Part shown: positions 19,076 to 31,609 of the stretch, in pieces | How the letters are laid out: every line of letters starts with the position of its first letter | Numbering within the stretch: position 1 is the first letter of the stretch | NCBI GenBank assembly: GCA_950097015.1 | Contig: CATNEN010000011.1 | Coordinates: 4,774,001-4,838,000 of the forward strand | Direction: 5' to 3' | DNA from: Macrostomum hystrix | Lineage: Eukaryota > Animalia > Platyhelminthes | DNA length: 64,000 nt | The notes under the pieces: generated by a model | What the model was told of the DNA's origin: nothing | Databases searched by the model: none | Seen by the model: the letters and a program-made list of their open reading frames with translations, nothing else | Program-made: the position numbers and the translations under genes

Positions 19076-19424
19076 GGTGGATTGAGGCTGTTTGTGTTGT
19101 GTTTATGCAGTGTGTTAGGCAGCTTAAGCTCTTATACCTCATTGTTAAATAACTAAACCAGGCACTCACAAACGAGTTTTTTTAATGTAAACTTGGATAC
19201 ACATAGTATTTTTGTATTTTAATAATGCCAGCATGTACATTTTTAGATGTAAAAATGACCCTCATACAAATTCCAGATCACAGATTTGTGACTGGTCGGC
19301 AAAAGATAACATCTAAAAAGTTTATTAATGTTAAATAAGAAGTCGAATGACTACTCAAAACGACTTATGAATATCTGGCTGATTGAGATACGATCTAAGA
19401 TACTCGCTGAATGCTCGAAATGAT

Positions 19425-19812
19425 GATCTGGGAGATTCGCTGACTGCTCAACATGAGGATCTGGTAGATTCGCTGATTGCTCAACATGAAGATCTGGGAG
19501 ATTCGCTGACTGCTCAAAACGAGGATCTGGGAGATTCACTGACTGCTCAAAACGAGGATCTGGGAGATTCGCTGACTGCTCAACATGAGGATCTGGGAGA
19601 TTCACTGACTGCTCAACATGCGGATCTGGTAGATTCACTGACTGCTCAAAACGAGGATCTGGGAGATTCACTGACTGCTCAAAACGAGGATCTGGGAGAT
19701 TCGCTGACTGCTCAACATGAGGATCTGGGAGATTCACTGACTGCTCAAAACGAGGATCTGGGAGATTCACTGACTGCTCAAAACGAGGATCTGGGAGATT
19801 CGCTGACTGCTT
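19425..19812. repeat. 33-bp minisatellite GAGGATCTGGGAGATTCACTGACTGCTCAAAAC downstream of TKFC
   Basis: About 12 units. Confidence 0.95.
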
Positions 19813-19948
19813 AAAATTATGATCTGGAAGTTTAGCTAATCGCTGAACAAAAGATTCAATGGCTGGTGACATTAATATGAAGATACTTCTTACTTATGCT
19901 TTCATTTTCTCAGTCACAGAAGAAAACGCCAAGTGGGTCAGTCAGTTT

Positions 19949-22108
19949 TCAAGTGGTCGTGAGCTTGAAGTCTTTATCATCCACTGGCACGCCGACAGCC
20001 TGACAAATCGCTCGGAGAATCAGCAGAGCAGCCCAAGCGCCTGGATCCGGTTGATTCGCGCCAGCTGCGGCGGCAATTTCAACTGCTACGTAGGCTGCTC
20101 TGCCAGCCCTAGGAGTCATGCTAGCGGTAGCCATAGCACCCCGTCTTGCCAGACTCAAGGCCTCGGACAAATTCACCCAATATTGGTCTCCATCTTGTTC
20201 GCCAACATTTTTAAATGCGTCCAGAAACCCATAGACAGTGTCCAACATTGTGCGATCTCCGCGCATTGCTCTTCCTGCTTCAACGATAGCGTCTAGAGCA
20301 GCTGACAGAGCCAAGATCCAGTGCCTAGCAATTGGTGGCTGTTGAATGCTAGCAGCAGCTGCAGCTAGGCCAATGCCGAACAGAGCACCCGAGCTGCCGC
20401 CCATATCACTCTGGGCTAAATCTGATAGGCGACTCAAAAGATAGCGAGGACCTAATTTAGCTACTGCTTTGCTATGCAGCAGTTGTTGCATAGCAACAGC
20501 ACCTCGAAACATAGTATCGCCACAGTCGCCGTCGCCGAGACCGCCAGCGGAATCAAGGCGATTCAGCAAAATTCTGGCGTTAATTAAGCTTTCGGCAATG
20601 GCAGCTAGAGAGGCCATAGCTAGACTGCCAGATTCTGGCGAGGGCCATGGGATACTATCCGAGTGGGTGTGTGTGTCGGCAGATGGCAGAGGCGACAACT
20701 CCAGCTCGGCTAGAGACTGAGCACCGGCCTGGGAGGCTGCTGGCCACCTGTAGTTGAGAGATTCAAGGACACTATAAGTCATGCTTTAAAAACACTAATG
20801 AGCCCAATGTGTCATAAACTCGATTGATCAGAGCTTAAGCTATCCTACATCCGATTCTTCAGGGCTTCAGCTTTCCTACACTCGATTCTTCAGGGCTTCC
20901 GTTGCCTTTACACCCGATTCTTCAGGCTTCAGCTATCCTACACCCGATTCTTCAGGGCTTCAGCTGTTCTACATCCGATTTGTCAGGTCTTGCGCTTTTA
21001 CAAGTGTAATATCTTTATCCAAGCCTTCAGGACTTAATTTACATTGTTCTAAATGAGATTCTCTCATTTAATCCAACTGGATTTTGTCTCACCTATGCGC
21101 TGGGGCATCTAACATAGGCAGCAGCCAATGATTGTCGTCGACTTCTTGACTGCCAAGTAGCAACAAACTGACTGAGAAACCCGGAGCTGACAATGACGTC
21201 ATTAGGTTGCCAATGTACATACGACGCACAATAGCCGGCGTAGCAAAAGAAGATCGCAAAGAATATTCAGCTTCTGCAGCAACTCCGGATAATTCCAAAG
21301 CAGATAGGCCACCTAGACCATTCACTAGCACAGCCCAGGAGGTCCCACCCGTTATTGCTTCCATAGACAATCGCAGACGCTTATCAGCTAGCAATTTTTG
21401 AACAACCGTTCGAACAACCGACTTGGAATCGTCAAGTCGGCCGACACCGGCTTCGCCATGAATTCCCAGACCCAGCTCCCAGCAACCCGCTGGCAATCGG
21501 CAGGTTCCAACAGTGGCCAGACTGCATCGCAAATTTTCCAATCGATCGACAATGTCGTCTAAACTGTGGCCTGAGTCGGCTAGGGCGCAAGCAATCTTCA
21601 TCATCAGGAGGCTACCAGCGATGCCGCGCCTGCCAACAGCGGGCGCCGGCGATTCCACAGCCGCGTCGTCGTCGCAGACGAACAAACGACAGCGAAGGTC
21701 AAGAGTTCGAGCCCTAGCCAGAGCGAGACCGAAATTCAACCGATCTCCCGTGTAGTTCATGATGAGTAGGAGCACGCCAGCTGGGCAGGCCAGCTGACGA
21801 ATCGCTTCAAGAATGTCAGCCGGAGCGGGTGAAGCAAACACGTGACCAGAAACCGCGGCGTCCAGAAGTCCCGGACCAACGAAGCCAGAGTAGGCCGGCT
21901 CGTGACCGGCACCTCCGCCACTAATTACTCTAACAAGATTCGAGCCGCGACCCCGTCTGCGAATCAGAACTCCGCCGCCGCTGTTTCCACTATCTTCATC
22001 GCCTGGTCTACCAATCAATGCAAGGCCTGGATCAGCCAAGGCGACGCCTTCGAGGGCACGGCGGACACACCCGTCTGACGACTGGTAAAACAGATTTGCT
22101 GCTGAAGA
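19949..22108 (-). CDS. TKFC: Triokinase/FMN cyclase (dihydroxyacetone kinase, DAK1+DAK2). Exons 22108-21093 and 20747-19949; start codon not present in this span.
   Basis: VISGGGAGHEP, VSGHVFASP, MNYTGDRLNFGLA, GRRGIAG, ELGLGIHGEAG (substrate-binding His), GDGDCGDT, MGGSSGALFG, GDRTMLD, AGRAAY, DPGA. One phase-2 GT-AG intron. The frame is open from an AG acceptor at 22109 with an upstream in-frame TAA and no ATG. Confidence 0.93.
20840..20990. repeat. Degenerate ~31-bp repeat CGATTCTTCAGGGCTTCAGCTATCCTACACC in the TKFC intron
   Basis: About 5 diverged units. Confidence 0.85.
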
Positions 22109-25100
22109 CTGCAGTTAATTGAATGTTTTAAAGAGCGTAAACTTTTTAATTAGTCTTCTACATAGCAACTCAATAACATATATCGATGTAATGCTAAACT
22201 TTTACTGATGAAAATCAGTAAAGCACTGTCCAATATAAAGTCCAACACCTTAATTGACTGTAGTAACATTGATGACAAGAGCTAGATGTATTAGATAAAA
22301 CAAAATACCCTTGAACACCAGCAGGACTAACTATGATAACCAAATGCAATAAGTTCATTTACCTAACCCAACCACAGTTTTGAATATAGCTAGGCATTCT
22401 TAATGGCCTTAACTTGCATAAGACATCTCAGTTCAACAAAAGGAAGAAAGACAGTCCAATTTATTTAAAGGTAGCTGTTATTTGTCCAGTTAGCCGGATA
22501 AATAGCCATTTGATTATTTGTCCGGTTAACCGGTTAACCACCCAAGGACTTAATTTCTCCCCTTTCAACAAGCAGGAGCAACGATCCTCCCAAAGACCAC
22601 TCTTGCCCTGCTGAGAGCCATCTTGAGTCTTGACCTCACAAAGACCAAACTATACCCTTGAACTAAGTTAGTCCCTGAAACAACCGAATTTTGGAAAAGG
22701 TTTTAATTTTTTTAATTAGCTGATAAGCGAAAATAATTAGAGACAAACTTCAAATCTGAATGACTGTCCTTTTGCAGTTTGTTAATTATTTTATCTTACA
22801 AATGATAGAGGTTCTCGTGGTAGCGCTACAACCCCTTATAACTTAACTCGGTTAACTGGACGAATAATCAAATGGCTACTTGTCCGGTTAACCGGACAAA
22901 TAACAACTGCCTTTATTTAATACTAGTCTGTATTAATATGAATTATTTCATATTATTTTTCTTACCAATAGCTAGCAGCCAGTAAGTAAACCAAAAATAT
23001 AGTTATACTATTAGAAAGGGACATTGTGATACATTGAAGTAATAATTAATCAATAATGATCAACAATGATTCATGAAAACTAAAAACTATGTACTGATTA
23101 AAAGCATGGTATAGTTTAGCCATGCATTTTTTAAGTTGACACAATGGTTAACATATTCTGTTGCATCAGATTATTGATCTACAATTTAAGACATTTTTCT
23201 ACCTCTGACAGTTTATACACTTTACTACGGATTACTGTTTTAATTCCTAGTCAAATTTAAGTTTTAATGAAAAAAAATGCAGAAAGATATGGGGGCCTTA
23301 AGTGATATTATTAGCTGCATATTGATATATCACTTTTTATATGGGTATAGAATTTAGAGTTTGTAAAAAGCAAAGCATTAGAGTCTAAAATAAAGAAATG
23401 GATATTTGTTTTAGCCCAAAATTGTGAGAGTAGTTGTAGGAAATAAACATTTATTAAAAATAGTTTGATTTAACTAAAAGTATAAAATTTGTAAAAATAG
23501 TTATAGGATAACTTTTAGTTTAATAGCACATAATTGTTAGTCTAGTTTAGTCTAGTCTAGTTTTATTTTAGGCCAAAGAGATTGCAATTGCTACAAACAC
23601 AATGCCATGTCATTCAAAAGCTTATATGCATTTAAGCATTTACTTGTAGTAGTTAAATGTTATTATATTTTAATAAATAATTACATATTCATACTTTAAA
23701 AATTGTGCATTTTGAGAATTGCCAAAGTTTCACAAAAGTTGACAAGAGGGTAGGCCTAGGCATAGTAGGGCCTAGCTATTTACTATTTTATAATCTAAGT
23801 TCTATGTTCTAGGACAGGAGGTATCAATATATAAAAACACGAAAAAATGAGTCATACCAATATTCAGACAGTATTAAGTGTAAATATAAATTAAATTAGG
23901 GCCTAAGATAAAAAATTTTATTTTATGTAAATGTAATACAAAAAATAGCAATGAGAATAGTAGTAGTAAATTTTATAGTTAGGCCCCTATTGTAGCTAGG
24001 CCTAGTAAGCTAGCCCATCATGACAAGAAAGTATGATTTCTATTAACTAGCTTAAGAAACTTAGTTTAAGAACATAGAACTTTGTGCTTAGTCTTCAGAC
24101 TCAGACAGCCTAGTCCTAGTCCTATTGTAGCTGCTACAAAAATAGCTACTCTGACTAGGGCCAAAAATAGAAGTATTCATACCTATTTGGACATGATATT
24201 CATAACAATATTAACAATTATAGCTAACATGGGGATTTCTGAATAGACTATAGATTCTATAGACTGTATAGATAGACTAGGCCTAGGCCTATAGCATGGC
24301 GATGGCCTAGGCCTAGTGTAATTTATTTAGAATAGAAAAATCAATATGTCCGATAAGGTCCGTAGCAATTAATAAGCAACAGTAAACTATTCACAAAGAC
24401 ATTAAAATGTAATGTAGTATGTACTGTACTATACACACACCAACACACACACAAAATGTTTGATTAGAGTTAATTGTCATGCTTTAAGCAACTTTTTACA
24501 TAAACGCTTGAAACGTCAACTTTTGCACCAATAATTAGCAATCCCTGCAAATAAAATAATTACTACGTCAGAATCTTTGTGGCTTTCTGTTTTATATATC
24601 GCGTATTAATGTTGCAATTTTAAAACATTTGTTATAACACTAACTGTTAAAAAGAGCGATAATATGAGCTTTAAGTTTCTGTGAACATAAATTGTGCAGA
24701 TTTCGCGGATAGTACTGAATATTTTGCATCGCTGGCACATATAAGTAATTGAACAAAGCCTTGAATCCCAATAGTAGGCTTTTAAATTAGGGTTAGGCCC
24801 TAGGCCTAACATAGCCTGCTAAATGCTCTAGCAGTTGCTAAGAGCTTGGCCAGTCTAGTTAAACAATTTATAAGTATGCGGCCATTACTTAATAGCTATG
24901 CCAGTTAAAGCTAAAGACTAGAAAGTTGATGAGCTTACCTGTTACTATACCTTGGACCCCAGTATCCTATAGATTTAAACTAAGTAGCTTTTTAGTTGTC
25001 CTCTGAGATTTGTTAAAATAATATTTTTGTCTAAAATATTTAATGCATTAAAAATGAAATATTTAATATATTGTTATAATTTCAATAATGATTATTTATT

Positions 25101-25260
25101 AGCAAGACGCTTAACTTTATGTTTCTTCAGTTCACACATTAGCGACATTTTACCGTGCGGTAACAGGTAAGAATGGATAACTTCACCGCAGGGTAATGTG
25201 TTTGACATTACTATGTGGCAAAGTTAAAGGTTTTTACTGTGCAGTAAAATGTCGCTAACA

Positions 25261-25345
25261 TTCAGTTCACCCAGCTGTTAAATAGGTTCCAGCATTAGCT
25301 AGGGTAATTGAAGGTGGGTGTGGCATCTCCCCAGTCCATGGACAA
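25261..25345 (+). mobile_element. CORE-SINE-like fragment (family 1)
   Basis: TTCAGTTCACCCAGCTGTTAAATAGG...CCCAGTCCATGGAC aligns with the minus-strand copy at 63240-63330 and with the core at 12370-12400. Confidence 0.6.
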
Positions 25346-25654
25346 AGACCAACCGTATAAAGCCTTGAGATGCACTGTGCAATAGCTGTGCTGCTGTTGC
25401 TGTGTTGTTGGCAGCATATCTGACCTAATTTGAGACGTGTTTCCAATTTTTGTTATTTAAATAATAATGAATTAAGGAATAAAATTCCTATTCATCTAGC
25501 CAAACTAAAAAAGATTGCTTGTTCACAAAGTCTTCATAGATAAGCTTAATAACACTATCAATAGCTAATTATAAGAGGCCAAGAGGGCTGTAGGAAGTTT
25601 AATTGCAATAGACCTGGAGCCAAAGAGGAGGCAGTTTTTTCGATTTTGGTGACT

Positions 25655-25885
25655 CCCTAGCATGCATGCACATAGATACCATATGGAGGCATAGGCTCAC
25701 ATAAACATGTACATCTGTCTTGACTTTCTCATTGTTAGGCAGTAGGTATATACTTTCACTGTGCCTTTGAGGTTGACCCTATGGGACATAAATTACTCAA
25801 GCCCCAAGGCTGCACCACAAGGTAATGCGGCCTTGCTGCAGAATTGAGCTTGTAGACCTTGGTACAAGAGGCAAGCACATAAGTC
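25655..25885 (-). mobile_element. Decayed copy of tRNA-derived SINE family 2
   Basis: The reverse complement contains AGGGTCAAC..AAGGCACAGTGAAAG, ACTGCCT..ATGAGAAAGTCA and GTGAGCCTATGCCTCC, all shared with 53123-53320. Confidence 0.7.
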
Positions 25886-26187
25886 ATGAATAAGCATAAT
25901 ATAAGTATACTAATAAATATATATCATACTGGCTTTATATTGTTTTGACTTTAATGTTATCTCATATTTTTAATCCAAAGCATGATGTCAGTATTTTTAG
26001 AAGATTTAGTTAACTTGTTGTAACATCTTTTATTAGCTTGTACTTTTAATTATTAATAATAATAATTTGCTAAATTTACAGCAAATATAATCAATCAAGT
26101 TACTTTTTATAATTAAGTGCAGCCTCATTCCAAAACACTAATTAAACAACTCATTGTGGTGACTGTTAAAATTGTGTAACAAAAGAC

Positions 26188-28677
26188 ATGAGAGTCAAGG
26201 ATCGCAATCAGATTGACTGTCTGCCTTGCGAGCAGCGCCAAATGGAATCTGGCCTGCCAGTGTTCAAGGTCATTGATGACACTGATGCCTCAGATCCATT
26301 CCTGCTGTTTGATCACATTGGCCCAGTGACTTTTCAACCAGGAGAGGCAGTTGGGGCTGCCGACCATCCGCATAGGTGAGGCTTGACTGTTTTGCTCTAA
26401 CAGACAATTAAACCTTTGTAGAAAGAGAATCGCCGTTCTTTTACAATTTTTAAGATGATCCCATTTCTTAACTTTAGAGTCCTGTGCCATTTCACTGCTA
26501 ACAGTGATTCCCTTTGCTACAAGAGATTATCCTGTCCCCATACTCTATTCTAATACTATAATTCCATACTATAAATTATCCTCATTCCCTAGCACCATAG
26601 AAGAGATTATATTCCAAGAAATTTTCACTTTCTCTCAGAGAGATTATCCCTTCAGCTACAAGAGATTATCCCTCAACTACAAGAGATTATCCCTTCAGCT
26701 ACAAGAGATTATCCCTTCAGCTACAAGAGATTATCCCTCAACTACAAGAGATTATCCCTTCAGCTACAAGAGATTATCCCTCAACTACAAGAGATTATCT
26801 CTGAAGCTGCAAGAGATTATCCCTCAGCTACAAGAGATTATCCCTCAACTACAAGAGATTATCCCTTCAGCTACAAGAGATTATCCCTTCAGCTACAAGA
26901 GATTATCCCTCAACTACAAGAGATTATCCCTTCAGCTACAAGAGATTATCCCTCAACTACAAGAGATTATCTCTGAAGCTGCAAGAGATTATCCCTCAGC
27001 TACAAGAGATTATCCCTCAACTACAAGAGCTTATCCCTGAAGCTGCAAGAGATTACCCCTGAAGCTGCAAGAGATTATCCCTCAGCTACAAGAGATTATC
27101 CCGGAAGCATTAAGAGATTATCCCTCAGCTACAAGAGATTATCCCTCAGCTACAAGAGATTATTCCTTCAGATATAAGAGATTTATTCCTTTATTTACAA
27201 GAGATTATCCCTCAGCTACAAGAGATTATCCCTCAGCTACAAGAGATTATTCCTTCAGATATAAGAGATTTATTCCTTTATTTACAAGAGATTATCCCTT
27301 CAGCTGAATTATCCCCTGCTCCCACCCGCAGAGGCATGGAGCTGATCAGTGTGCTGCTACAGGGCAGCATTCATCACGCCGACAGCATCGGGCACGACAG
27401 CGTCCTGCCAGCTGGCAGTGTGCAGCACATTCGCTTCGGCCGTGGCCTTGTCCACTTTGAAATGCCCGGCCCGAGCCTGGTGCAAACTGGCGGCACCCTG
27501 GAGGGCTACCAGATCTGGGTGAACCTGCCACCTGCTGACAAACTCTGCAGCCCAGTTTACACCGAAATTCCGCCAGACGATGTGCCCCGCGTCAGAACCG
27601 AAGACGGCGGCGCCGAGGTTCGAGTCCTGGCCGGCTCCAGCCAGGGCGTTGAAGGCGCCGTCGGATTTGTCACGCCAGTCATGCTGCTGGATGTTCGGCT
27701 CCTGCGACGGGGAGCCACCGTGAAACTCGAGGTCAGTCTGCAGTGCCTGTTAATTGCATTTACCATTCTCTATGCGTTCCACTCGTTGTCTCTCTGTCCC
27801 CTGTCCCTTTGTCTCTCTGTCCCTCTGTCCTTCTGTCCCTCTGTCTCTCTTCCTCTCTGTCCCTCTGTCCCTGTCCCTCTGTCTCTCTATCCCTTTGTCC
27901 CTCTGTCCCTCTGTCCCTCTGTCTCTCTGTCTCTCTGTCTCTCTGTCCCTCTGTCCCTCTGTCTCTCTGTCCCTCTGTCCCTCTGTCCCTCTATCCCTCT
28001 GTCTCTCTGTCCCTCTGTCCCTCTGTCCCTCTGTCTCTCTGTCCCTCTGTCCCTCTGTCTCTCTGTCCCTCTGTCCCTCTGTCCCTCTGTCTCTCTGTCT
28101 CTCTGTCCCTCTGTCTCTCTGTCCCTTTGTCTCTCTGTCCCTCTGTCCCTTTGTCTCTCTGTCCCTTTGTCCCTCTGTCCCTCTGTCTATCCTTCCACTT
28201 GTGCATTTAAATCCAGTTTTATCTACTATAAGTAGTGAATTTCGCACGCAAAGGTGGGCAGCAATCTCTCATTTATCACTGCAGGTGCCCGAGCAGTACG
28301 AATGCGTATTCGCCTACTGTTTCGCCGGCTCCGGCGCAATTGTTGGCGGCCGTTCTTTGCCAAAAAATTGCAAAGCCACCATTGGCCAAGGCGAGTCAAT
28401 CATCCTGTCAACTGATAACGAGCCCTGCCACCTGTTAATTGGCGCCGGTTTGCCAGTCAGGGAGCCGGTTGTCAAGTACGGCCCATTCGCCATGTCAACT
28501 GAGCAGGAAATCCGGGAGGCTGTGCAGGACTATCGCCAGGGCCTCATGGGCGAGTGCCCGCCACCTGGTGCCCAAGCCAGGCAGCGACAGATCGAGGCCG
28601 CCCTGGCACTGCAACGGGCCAATAGCGCCGATTCGGCTGGCCCAGCCAATCACGGACACGCTGACGGGCGCGACTGA
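26188..28677 (+). CDS. PIR: Pirin (cupin-fold iron protein), about 326 aa. Exons 26188-26375, 27332-27731, 28285-28677.
   Basis: DPFLLFDH...DHPHRG across intron 1, RGLVHFEMP (iron ligands H-x-H and H-x-E intact), QIWVNLP, EPVVKYGPFAMST. GT-AG introns of phase 2 and 0. Confidence 0.92.
26635..27310. repeat. 21-bp minisatellite CAAGAGATTATCCCTCAGCTA in pirin intron 1
   Basis: About 30 variant units running up to the polypyrimidine tract of the acceptor. Confidence 0.96.
27787..28190. repeat. (CTGTCCCT/CTGTCTCT)n 8-bp repeat in pirin intron 2
   Basis: About 50 units. Confidence 0.96.
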
Positions 28678-28978: not shown

Positions 28979-29914
28979 TTTATAATCTTGCAGATTTCAG
29001 GTTCTAGTCAAGCTTGTATGATTTTTATTTCCAATAATCGTAATCGGATACTAATGTTCTTGTGTGCTCATAGCAGATATTTTTGGCTTCATTTATTGTG
29101 CTTCGATATAAACATTTTAATGAGATCATTTAGAGATTAACGAAATTTCAGATTTAAAAAATAACATTGAACCCATATCAAGGTTAGATACTCGTAGATA
29201 GATTGATAGAAATTACAGCAGATGTACAGCAGTCCAGTCCATGGACTAGGGACAACCACCCGAACTTCTACTCAAACAGATGCAGGTATAAACCATCATT
29301 TTGCAAGCCGCCTTTTATTAAATACGAGCGTATATTACAGTATACCAAAGTCAGTTACTAGTAATAGTTACTACTTATATCAGGACATTCGCTTCAAGCT
29401 TCAAAAACATTTCTAAAAAGACAAAAGCCTATTTTTTCTGACGTGCCTAGCAACTAGCTTTTTTCACCCATTACTGAAACATCGTCTAAATAGTTTTATT
29501 TTATTGTAAAGCCTAGTTAAAGACAATTCTGATTTCAAGCACGGGTCTATTTTCACGAGTGTACTTTTTGGAAGACAATAGCAAGCAAGGAATAGTATTT
29601 CTAGTTAAAAAAGATGCAGCATATTAATATCTGATTAGTGTGGCCGAGAAATATAAGTTTATAAAAATAAAATCCAAAAATGTTTTGAAAATGAACTTAC
29701 CTGCAGATTAAATTTGTGTAGCAAATACCAGATTACATTCGTGTTTCCATAGATTTATGTCTCTGTTGCACAGCCTTTAGAATACTAAAATTGTAGGCGG
29801 CTGACTCATGTGGACCTATTAGACATATGTTTGCTTGTTAGACAAATTCGTTTATTTTTCAGACACCTATGTTACCTGTTAGACACGAATAATAATATTT
29901 TAGATACATTTTCT

Positions 29915-31040
29915 GTGTTGGACACAGATGTTCACGTGTTAGACACAGATGTTCACGTGTTGGACACAGATGTTCACGTGTTAGACACAAATGTTCACGT
30001 GTTGGACACAGATGTTCACGTGTTGGACACAGATGTTCACGTGTTAGACACAAATGTTCACGTGTTGGACACAGATTTTCACGTGTTAGACACAAATGTT
30101 CACGTGTTAGACACAAATGTTCACGTGTTAGAAACAGATGTTCATGTGTTGGACACAGATGTTCACGTGTTGGACACAGATGTTCACATGTTAGACACAG
30201 ATGTTCACATGTTAGAAACAGATGGTCACGTGTTGGACACAGATGGTCACGTGTTGGACACAGATGTTCACATGTTAGAAACAGATGGTCACGTGTTGGA
30301 CACAGATGGTCATGTGTTGGACACAGATTTTCACGTGTTGGACACAGATGTTCACGTGTTAGACACAGATGTTTACGTGTTGGACACAGATGTTCACGTG
30401 TTAGACACAGATGTTCACGTGTTGGACACAGATGTTCACGTGTTGGACACAGATGTTCACGTGTTAAACACAGATGTTCACGTGTTGGACACAGATGTTC
30501 ACGTGTTAGACACATATGTTCACGTGTTAGACACATATGTTCACGTGTTAGACACATATGTTCACGTGTTAGACACAGATGTTCACGTGTTAGACACATA
30601 TGTTCACGTGTTGGACACAGATGTTCACGTGTTAGACACAGATGTTCACGTGTTGGACACAGATGTTCACGTGTTAGACACAAATGTTCACGTGTTAGAA
30701 ACAGATGGTCACGTGTTGGACACAGATGGTTACGTGTTGGAAACAGATGGTCACGTGTTAGACACATATGTTCACGTGTTAGAAACAGATGTTCACGTGT
30801 TAGAAACAGATGTTCACGTCTTAGAAACAGATGTTCACGTGTTAGAAACAGATGTTCACGTGTTAGAAACAGATGTTCACGTGTTGGACACAGATGGTCA
30901 CGTGTTGGACACAGATGGTCACGTGTTGGACACAGATGGTCACGTGTTGGACACAGATGTTCATGTGTTGGACACAGGTATTCACGTGTTGGACAAAGAT
31001 GGTCACGTGTTAGACACAGATGTTCACGTGTTGGACACAG
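29915..31040. repeat. 21-bp minisatellite GTTGGACACAGATGTTCACGT
   Basis: About 53 variant units, nearly all containing CACGTG; source of the VLDTDVH ORF. Confidence 0.97.
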
Positions 31041-31609
31041 CTGTAAGGCACAAATTTAACCTTTTGCAAACTGATGCTTACCTTTTAGATAAGTTGTTCA
31101 CGTGTTAGATACATCTGAGAAATGCTAAAGTTTATGTTTTACAATGCGAAGAAGATTAACATGACTGTTATCAATACTACTCATTTCGCTGTTCTACAGT
31201 TAATGTGCCTTTTAATATAGTTTTTATGAATGAATTTTTTAATATTAAATCTGGCTTTTCGAAAGTATTTAAACAAAAAATGTAATAATTATCTCTTTCG
31301 GTTATAATAAACCGTTATCTAATATATTAAGCTTATTTTATCTAACCTTTGTCAATATACCTAGAGCTTCACCGTCTGTCTACGCAAATTTATTTTTGCT
31401 ACTGTAAGTTTGCTGCCTTATCTACTAACAACCCTATTAGTTGAAACACATTACCTACGATTGTAGTAAATATTCGCAAGATATTAATATACTCATTTTT
31501 GCTTTACTTCTTGTTGTTTCTAGAAACTTTCTTATTACTAAACAATTCATTTTTTCTACTGACGTCCTTATTGATTTCTATGAAACTTATAGGCCATTGG
31601 ATTGCGAGT

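What the first reader, a model, noticed from the sequence alone, without database searches (positions are those of the whole stretch)
21750..22120. TKFC has no start codon: the acceptor is in phase for an AUG supplied by a spliced leader
The conserved N-terminus (SSAANLFYQSSDGCVRRALEGVALADPGL, equivalent to human [21 protein letters not shown]) begins exactly after ...TTAACTGCAG at 22109 in phase 0, with an in-frame TAA just upstream. The first in-frame ATG is more than 100 codons later, inside the DAK1 domain. By eye I found no upstream ATG|GT mini-exon. Flatworm spliced leaders end in AUG, which can serve as the initiator Met; this would give MSSAANLFY. The gene would then be translatable only after trans-splicing.
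Basis: partly seen in the sequence, partly recalled or inferred. Interest (0 to 1): 0.72.

Follow-up and report, generated by a model that had tools for sequence, protein, structure and literature searches.

The report
Spliced leader supplies TKFC start codon
In this Macrostomum-type flatworm the triokinase (TKFC) gene has no start codon of its own, and RNA assemblies show the trans-spliced leader, which ends in AUG, joined in frame just before its first codon; this is a new example of a mechanism already known in flatworms.

Summary

**Gene.** A two-exon Dak1+Dak2 (TKFC-like) gene lies on the minus strand. Its first exon opens at 22108, just after a CTGCAG acceptor. There is an in-frame TAA at 22117-22115. 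The first in-frame ATG is at 21760-21758, inside the Dak1 domain.

**RNA.** Contigs from three libraries of one study cover the exon without a mismatch and lack the intron. They carry 21 extra letters at 22109. With the shared G, these equal the last 22 nt of the published 35-nt Macrostomum lignano spliced leader (...TTGCATG). A fourth run, from a second study, also stops at 22109. The mRNA therefore reads ...UUGCAUG|UCUUCA, giving MSSAANLFY and a 605-codon frame.

**Rivals.** No RNA joint runs to upstream DNA. No ATG...GT[AG]AG mini-exon exists in the 3972 bp upstream.

**Limits.** Initiation at the leader's AUG is inferred, not shown.

**Novelty.** The mechanism is published (Cheng et al. 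2006, cited in PMC12582326 and PMC9851317). This scan has already noted the same pattern for other genes of this genome (SIRT6, NDUFA5, SFMBT, TOP3A, cardiolipin synthase). It is real but ordinary: low interest.

The parts
22109..22114 (-). SL trans-splice acceptor CTGCAG, with AG at 22110-22109. It matches the published Macrostomum SL-acceptor motif [T/C]TNCAG.
   Evidence: Sequence. RNA contigs switch to leader sequence here. Motif from PMC8629364.
22115..22117 (-). In-frame TAA three codons upstream of the exon. It closes the frame in unspliced RNA.
21093..22108 (-). Exon 1 (1016 nt, ends in phase 2). It encodes residues 2-339 including the Dak1 domain and has no ATG before codon 117.
   Evidence: Pfam Dak1 E 7.6e-76. 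PDB DHA kinases at E 3e-41. 2004-nt RNA contigs in X5, X6 and X7 with 0 differences over 21090-22109.
21758..21760 (-). First in-frame genomic ATG (residue 118), inside Dak1 and after the GGGAGHEP motif.
20748..21092 (-). Intron 1 (345 nt; GTGAGA...CTACAG), absent from the RNA contigs. It holds a roughly 31-nt tandem repeat.
   Evidence: The loose end at 21090 equals the start of exon 2.
19949..20747 (-). Exon 2 coding part, containing the Dak2 domain. The TGA stop is at 19951-19949.
   Evidence: Pfam Dak2 E 3.2e-34. ORF list. Frame check.
22111..26080 (-). Upstream outron and intergenic region shared with a divergent pirin-like gene. It has no ATG-bearing phase-0 mini-exon. The transcription start is unknown.
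   Evidence: No joints in RNA contigs. Only one low-depth colinear contig, at 22243-22419 in one library. Mini-exon scan found 0 hits.

Best explanation
This is a TKFC-like dihydroxyacetone kinase gene (Dak1+Dak2). Its pre-mRNA is trans-spliced at the CTGCAG acceptor at 22114-22109 to the Macrostomum spliced leader. The last three bases of the leader, AUG, land in phase 0 before the first exon codon (UCU). The mature mRNA therefore carries AUG UCU UCA GCA GCA... and encodes a 605-residue protein starting MSSAANLFY. The outron, with its in-frame TAA, is discarded. Without trans-splicing no AUG can open the conserved N-terminal 117 codons, so making the full enzyme depends on the leader. Shown here: the SL-exon junction, the frame, and the absence of any other AUG. 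Inferred: that ribosomes start at the leader's AUG.
For:: 2004-nt contigs in three libraries (X5, X6, X7) match 21090-22109 with 0 differences and lack the intron. Each carries 21 further letters beyond 22109. The letters printed for X6 are, on the minus strand, CGAAGACTCAATTTATTGCAT, followed by the G at 22109. A contig from a second study (X1) also ends at 22109, with 7 unmatched letters that were not printed. No joints to upstream DNA were reported.

the published M. lignano SL is CGGTCTCTTACTGCGAAGACTCAATTTATTGCATG. Its last 22 nt are identical to what was seen.

the published SL acceptor motif [T/C]TNCAG fits CTGCAG.

the SL AUG is the first AUG of the modelled mRNA and opens 605 codons. 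The next AUG is out of frame (11 codons). The next in-frame AUG is residue 118.

residues 2-117 are conserved coding sequence, including the invariant GGGxGHEP. Other animal TKFC proteins have their Met 1-4 residues before the aligned position, so the leader's Met gives an N-terminus of normal length.

the UniProt M. lignano TKFC model (65-71% identical) also starts without Met, at SAANNLF.

the literature records that flatworm SLs end in AUG and that this AUG can serve as initiator (Cheng et al. 2006).
Against: There is no protein-level or ribosome-profiling evidence. The evidence is assembled contigs, not raw reads, so rare alternative 5' ends could be missed. The leader letters were printed for only one of the four runs; for the others only the lengths are known (21, 21 and 7). 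The context of the SL AUG (U at -3, U at +4) is weak by vertebrate rules. The runs are not on record as RNA; that they are RNA is deduced from the removed intron and the leader.
Confidence: 0.88

Rival explanations
1. A cis-spliced upstream mini-exon, within or beyond the 4 kb upstream, supplies the ATG in at least some transcripts. The SL form would then be one isoform among several.
For: Contigs drop rare variants (tool note). One low-depth colinear contig at 22243-22419 shows some transcription, or DNA carry-over, upstream.
Against: No joint from 22109 to upstream sequence appears in four runs. There are 0 phase-0 ATG...GT[AG]AG candidates in 3972 bp. The region ends at a divergent pirin-like gene.
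Confidence: 0.04
2. The SL AUG is skipped and translation starts at Met118 or at a non-AUG codon, giving a truncated or different protein.
For: The context of the SL AUG is weak. The E. granulosus survey (PMC3510090) cautions that not every in-frame SL AUG need be used in vivo.
Against: Residues 2-117 are conserved as protein and hold the invariant GGGxGHEP motif of Dak1. That conservation makes sense only if they are translated. An out-of-frame AUG lies between the SL AUG and Met118. The CTG at 22114-22112 is removed with the outron.
Confidence: 0.05
3. The SL-exon junction is an assembly chimera of the de Bruijn contigs.
For: The SL is shared by thousands of transcripts, and contigs break within it (only 21 letters are kept).
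Against: The junction falls on a canonical AG acceptor and on the exact 3' end of the SL. It is identical in three libraries, and a fourth run from another study stops at the same base.
Confidence: 0.02

Closest known systems
Flatworm mRNAs that use the SL 3'-terminal AUG as initiator Met (Cheng, Cohen, Ndegwa and Davis 2006, J Biol Chem 281:733, Schistosoma mansoni; also Echinococcus granulosus, PMC3510090)
   Same: The SL ends in AUG. The acceptor is in phase 0 with the main ORF. No genomic ATG lies near the conserved N-terminus. The SL AUG is needed for a full-length protein.
   Different: The species is a free-living macrostomorph and the gene is TKFC. Here there is only RNA-assembly evidence. 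The original paper was not held in the library; as summarised in PMC3510090, it showed the SL AUG able to serve as initiator in vivo.
Macrostomum SL trans-splicing as annotated for M. lignano, M. cliftonense and M. hystrix (PMC8629364, PMC10468722)
   Same: Identical leader over the 22 nt seen. Same acceptor motif [T/C]TNCAG. PMC10468722 already notes that the SL probably contains the final ATG as a translation start codon.
   Different: Neither paper, in the passages I read by term search, names TKFC or counts genes that depend on the SL AUG.
slORFs: ORFs created by SL addition in nematodes, ascidians and kinetoplastids (slORFfinder, PMC9851317)
   Same: The start codon is donated by the leader.
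   Different: Those are mostly near-cognate NUG starts and new or alternative ORFs. Here a canonical AUG opens the conserved main ORF.
Other genes of this same genome noted earlier by this scan (SIRT6, NDUFA5, SFMBT, TOP3A, cardiolipin synthase)
   Same: Same leader, and the same ATG-less first exon opening at an in-frame acceptor, with RNA support reported.
   Different: Different loci. Those notes were not re-tested here.

Membership tests
SL-AUG-initiated flatworm mRNA (Cheng et al. 2006 class) | The mature mRNA carries the spliced leader at its 5' end, joined at an AG acceptor | tested here: met
   leader letters follow 22109 in X6. X5 and X7 have extensions of the same length, and X1 stops at the same base. 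The acceptor CTGCAG is seen.
SL-AUG-initiated flatworm mRNA (Cheng et al. 2006 class) | The leader ends in AUG | tested here: met
   One search gives ...TTGCAT plus G. The published SL ...TTGCATG is followed by a GTAAG donor in the SL RNA gene.
SL-AUG-initiated flatworm mRNA (Cheng et al. 2006 class) | The SL AUG is in frame with the main conserved ORF, with no stop between | tested here: met
   605 codons open from the SL AUG.
SL-AUG-initiated flatworm mRNA (Cheng et al. 2006 class) | No other AUG can give the conserved N-terminus | tested here: met
   upstream TAA, and the next in-frame AUG is residue 118; the N-terminus aligns with the starts of orthologues.
SL-AUG-initiated flatworm mRNA (Cheng et al. 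2006 class) | Ribosomes actually initiate at the SL AUG | not testable with these tools
   This needs proteomics, ribosome profiling or a reporter.
Triokinase/FMN cyclase (TKFC, two-domain DHA kinase) | Dak1 (DhaK) domain followed by Dak2 (DhaL) domain in one polypeptide | tested here: met
   PF02733 at 7.6e-76 in exon 1 and PF02734 at 3.2e-34 in exon 2; one spliced contig holds both.
Triokinase/FMN cyclase (TKFC, two-domain DHA kinase) | Conserved substrate-site motifs (GGGxGHEP, NYTGD, GIHGE in Dak1; DGDCG in Dak2) | tested here: met
   All are read directly. Their roles are taken from established knowledge of DhaK/DhaL, not tested here.
Triokinase/FMN cyclase (TKFC, two-domain DHA kinase) | Kinase and FMN-cyclase activity | not testable with these tools
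   This needs an enzyme assay.

The most novel reading that the evidence does not exclude
Dependence of TKFC on the leader's AUG is conserved across Macrostomum species: the M. lignano model also lacks a Met. It could then act as a regulatory gate, with enzyme output set by trans-splicing efficiency and by translation of the leader-capped mRNA rather than by transcription alone.
Probability: 0.1. Interest if true: 0.4.

Novelty: new member of a known kind. Interest (0 to 1): 0.2.

Why it matters
The main value is for annotation. Gene finders that require a genomic ATG will truncate this gene to Met118 or call it partial. The public M. lignano TKFC model already starts without Met and has an internal gap. 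The case adds one well-supported example from a free-living flatworm to a mechanism first shown in schistosomes. It does not open a new question.

Tried and rejected
- **SL copies in the window.** Searching for the 22-nt leader with up to 3 mismatches gave no match, so the leader is not encoded near the gene and comes from elsewhere.
- **Cis mini-exons.** A scan for phase-0 ATG...GT[AG]AG in the 3972 bp upstream found none. Weaker donors were not scanned.
- **Bacterial-type promoter scan of the outron**. It is uninformative for a eukaryote.
- **ARAGORN on the intergenic region**. It found no tRNA.
- **Genomic DNA of the M. lignano homologue.** Looking it up by exact protein found nothing on record, so conservation of the acceptor could not be checked at the DNA level.
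- **Exhaustive protein search**. The only close relative was the same M. lignano protein. No further flatworm orthologues with visible leader-derived N-termini turned up.
- **Cheng et al. 2006.** It could not be read and is cited through papers that summarise it.
- **Joined model.** No search was made with the joined SL+exon1+exon2 model. Exons were searched apart by reference. The joined frame was only counted locally.

Full report
**What is in the sequence.**
The feature lies on the minus strand. Read 5'->3', the DNA is ...TTAAAACATTCAATTAACTGCAG|TCTTCAGCAGCAAATCTG....
- The AG of the acceptor is at 22110-22109 and the first exon base is 22108.
- From there the frame reads SSAANLFYQSSDGCVRRALEGVALADPGL... 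and stays open for 338 codons, to a GTGAGA donor after 21093.
- Three codons upstream there is an in-frame TAA at 22117-22115.
- The first in-frame ATG is at 21760-21758, which is exon codon 117.
- The exon-1 product matches Pfam Dak1 over residues 47-319 (E 7.6e-76). It also matches solved dihydroxyacetone kinases (E 3e-41), with query residue 48 aligned to residue 40 of the Citrobacter enzyme. The exon therefore holds essentially the whole N-terminus.
- The second exon (20747-19949) matches Dak2 (E 3.2e-34).

**The RNA evidence.**
The run search gave four runs of one study that hold 78-87% of the sampled words of a query that is 78% exon. It also gave four weaker runs of a second study. I laid three runs of the first study and one of the second on window:21050-26400.
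- In X5, X6 and X7 a 2004-nt contig matches 21090-22109 with no difference.
- At its lower end the contig runs on into letters that are the reverse complement of the start of exon 2. The 345-nt intron is therefore removed, and the material is RNA, although the runs are not labelled as such.
- At its upper end each contig has 21 further letters beyond 22109. Those printed (X6) are ATGCAATAAATTGAGTCTTCG on the + strand, which is CGAAGACTCAATTTATTGCAT on the gene's strand, followed by the G at 22109.
- A 368-nt contig of X1 (second study, 2 differences in 361) also stops at 22109, with 7 unmatched letters that were not printed.
- No joint to any upstream place was reported.

**Identity of the leader.**
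Ustyantsev and Berezikov (PMC8629364) give the 35-nt M. lignano spliced leader as CGGTCTCTTACTGCGAAGACTCAATTTATTGCATG.
- Its last 22 nt equal the 21 loose letters plus G.
- The final G is ambiguous in the alignment, because the acceptor AG also ends in G. The mRNA sequence is the same either way: ...UUGCAUG UCU UCA GCA.
- The same paper gives [T/C]TNCAG as the top motif at SL acceptors. The site here is CTGCAG.
- The leader is not encoded in the window.
- The best protein relative is the UniProt M. lignano TKFC, at 65-71% identity. The two share a lineage-specific insertion after the N-terminal helix.

The window therefore comes from a Macrostomum-type flatworm, but it is not the same gene copy as that M. 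lignano entry. Earlier notes of this scan name the genus, and one names M. hystrix. I did not test the species.

**Consequence for translation.**
I modelled the mRNA as published SL plus exon 1 plus exon 2. This was a local count only; no search was made with the joined model.
- The SL AUG is the first AUG and opens 605 codons ending at the TGA at 19951-19949.
- The next AUG is out of frame and opens 11 codons.
- The next in-frame AUG is residue 118. A protein started there would lack the invariant GGGAGHEP motif.
- Residues 2-117 are conserved as protein between the two Macrostomum sequences and, from about residue 12, across animals.
- Other animal TKFC proteins carry their Met 1-4 residues before the aligned K-K-[LF] position. 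A Met placed directly before SSAANLF therefore gives a normal N-terminus.
- The M. lignano database model itself begins SAANNLF with no Met. That is what a genome-only gene model would give if that gene also relies on the leader. This is suggestive only, because the model is imperfect and also skips an internal segment.

That ribosomes start at the SL AUG is an inference from these points and from the literature. It was not observed.

**Rivals.**
- Upstream cis exon with an ATG. The RNA gives no support. A scan of the 3972 bp up to the next gene found no phase-0 ATG...GT[AG]AG candidate, against 1.3 expected. One low-depth contig at 22243-22419, in one library, may be outron RNA or DNA carry-over.
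- Non-AUG start at the CTG at 22114-22112. This is excluded for the mature mRNA, because that codon is removed with the outron.
- Assembly chimera. This is unlikely, because the junction sits on the AG and on the exact end of the leader in several libraries.

**Comparison with what is known.**
- All reported flatworm SLs end in AUG, and that AUG can serve as initiator. This goes back to Cheng et al. 2006, summarised in PMC12582326, PMC9851317 and PMC3510090. According to PMC9851317, 28% of trans-spliced S. mansoni transcripts have the AUG in frame and more than 40 cDNAs need it.
- The Macrostomum genome paper PMC10468722 already remarks that the SL probably contains the final ATG as a start codon.
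- This scan holds 26 notes of the same kind in this genome. Several have RNA support reported by other agents: SIRT6, NDUFA5, SFMBT, TOP3A and cardiolipin synthase. I did not re-test them.

TKFC is thus one more member of a known class.

**Neighbourhood.**
The gene upstream, on the + strand, is pirin-like. Its RNA contigs begin at 26081, just after TTTACAG, with 23 unmatched letters. It is probably SL-spliced too. There the leader's AUG would open only AUG CAA AUA UAA, and the gene has its own ATG at 26188. This is a useful contrast within the same window, but those letters were not printed, so the reading is an inference.

**Verdict.**
The mechanism is already known, so this is a new member of a known kind with low interest (0.2). 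Its practical value is for annotation.

Noticed in passing
window 26075-26190 (+): The pirin-like gene divergent from TKFC seems SL trans-spliced too. RNA contigs start at 26081, after TTTACAG, with 23 unmatched letters that were not printed. There the leader's AUG would open only a 3-codon uORF (AUG CAA AUA UAA), and the gene uses its own ATG at 26188.
   Followed up: partly
window 22461-22920: MITE-like element with 72-nt terminal inverted repeats (86% complementary), about 350 nt upstream of the TKFC acceptor. RNA contigs from other copies map here at 90-95% identity.
   Followed up: partly
window 25101-25343: Short repeat with very high RNA contig depth (300-600) and many divergent copies. 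It contains a 25-nt hairpin at 25139-25258. Flanking loose ends look tRNA-like (GGGTTCGATTCCCGAC), but ARAGORN calls no tRNA. It may be a SINE or another abundant small-RNA-derived repeat.
   Followed up: no
window 19350-19870 (-): Tandem repeat of roughly 39-nt units directly after the TKFC stop codon, apparently inside the 3' UTR. The RNA contig ends at about 19782, inside the repeat. An AATAAA lies near 19325.
   Followed up: no
window 20840-21000 (-): Tandem repeat of roughly 31 nt (GAAGCCCTGAAGAATCGGGTGTAGGATAGCT-like units) inside TKFC intron 1.
   Followed up: no
P0001 (UniProt A0A1I8J344, M. lignano): The public M. lignano TKFC model starts without Met (SAANNLF...). It also lacks the segment PAGVLLLIMNYTG, jumping from RQLAC to DRLNFG, so it looks mis-annotated.
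   Followed up: partly
window 22048: Run X1 (second study) reads T for C on the + strand. This would change the nearly invariant Gly21 to Ser. The contig has depth 5.5, so it may be an allele, a related strain or an error.
   Followed up: no
window 27750-28250 and 29810-31110: Long low-complexity tandem arrays. On the + strand they read as SLCPSVPL repeats (27750-28250) and VHVLDTD repeats (29810-31110), in and beyond the pirin-like gene.
   Followed up: no
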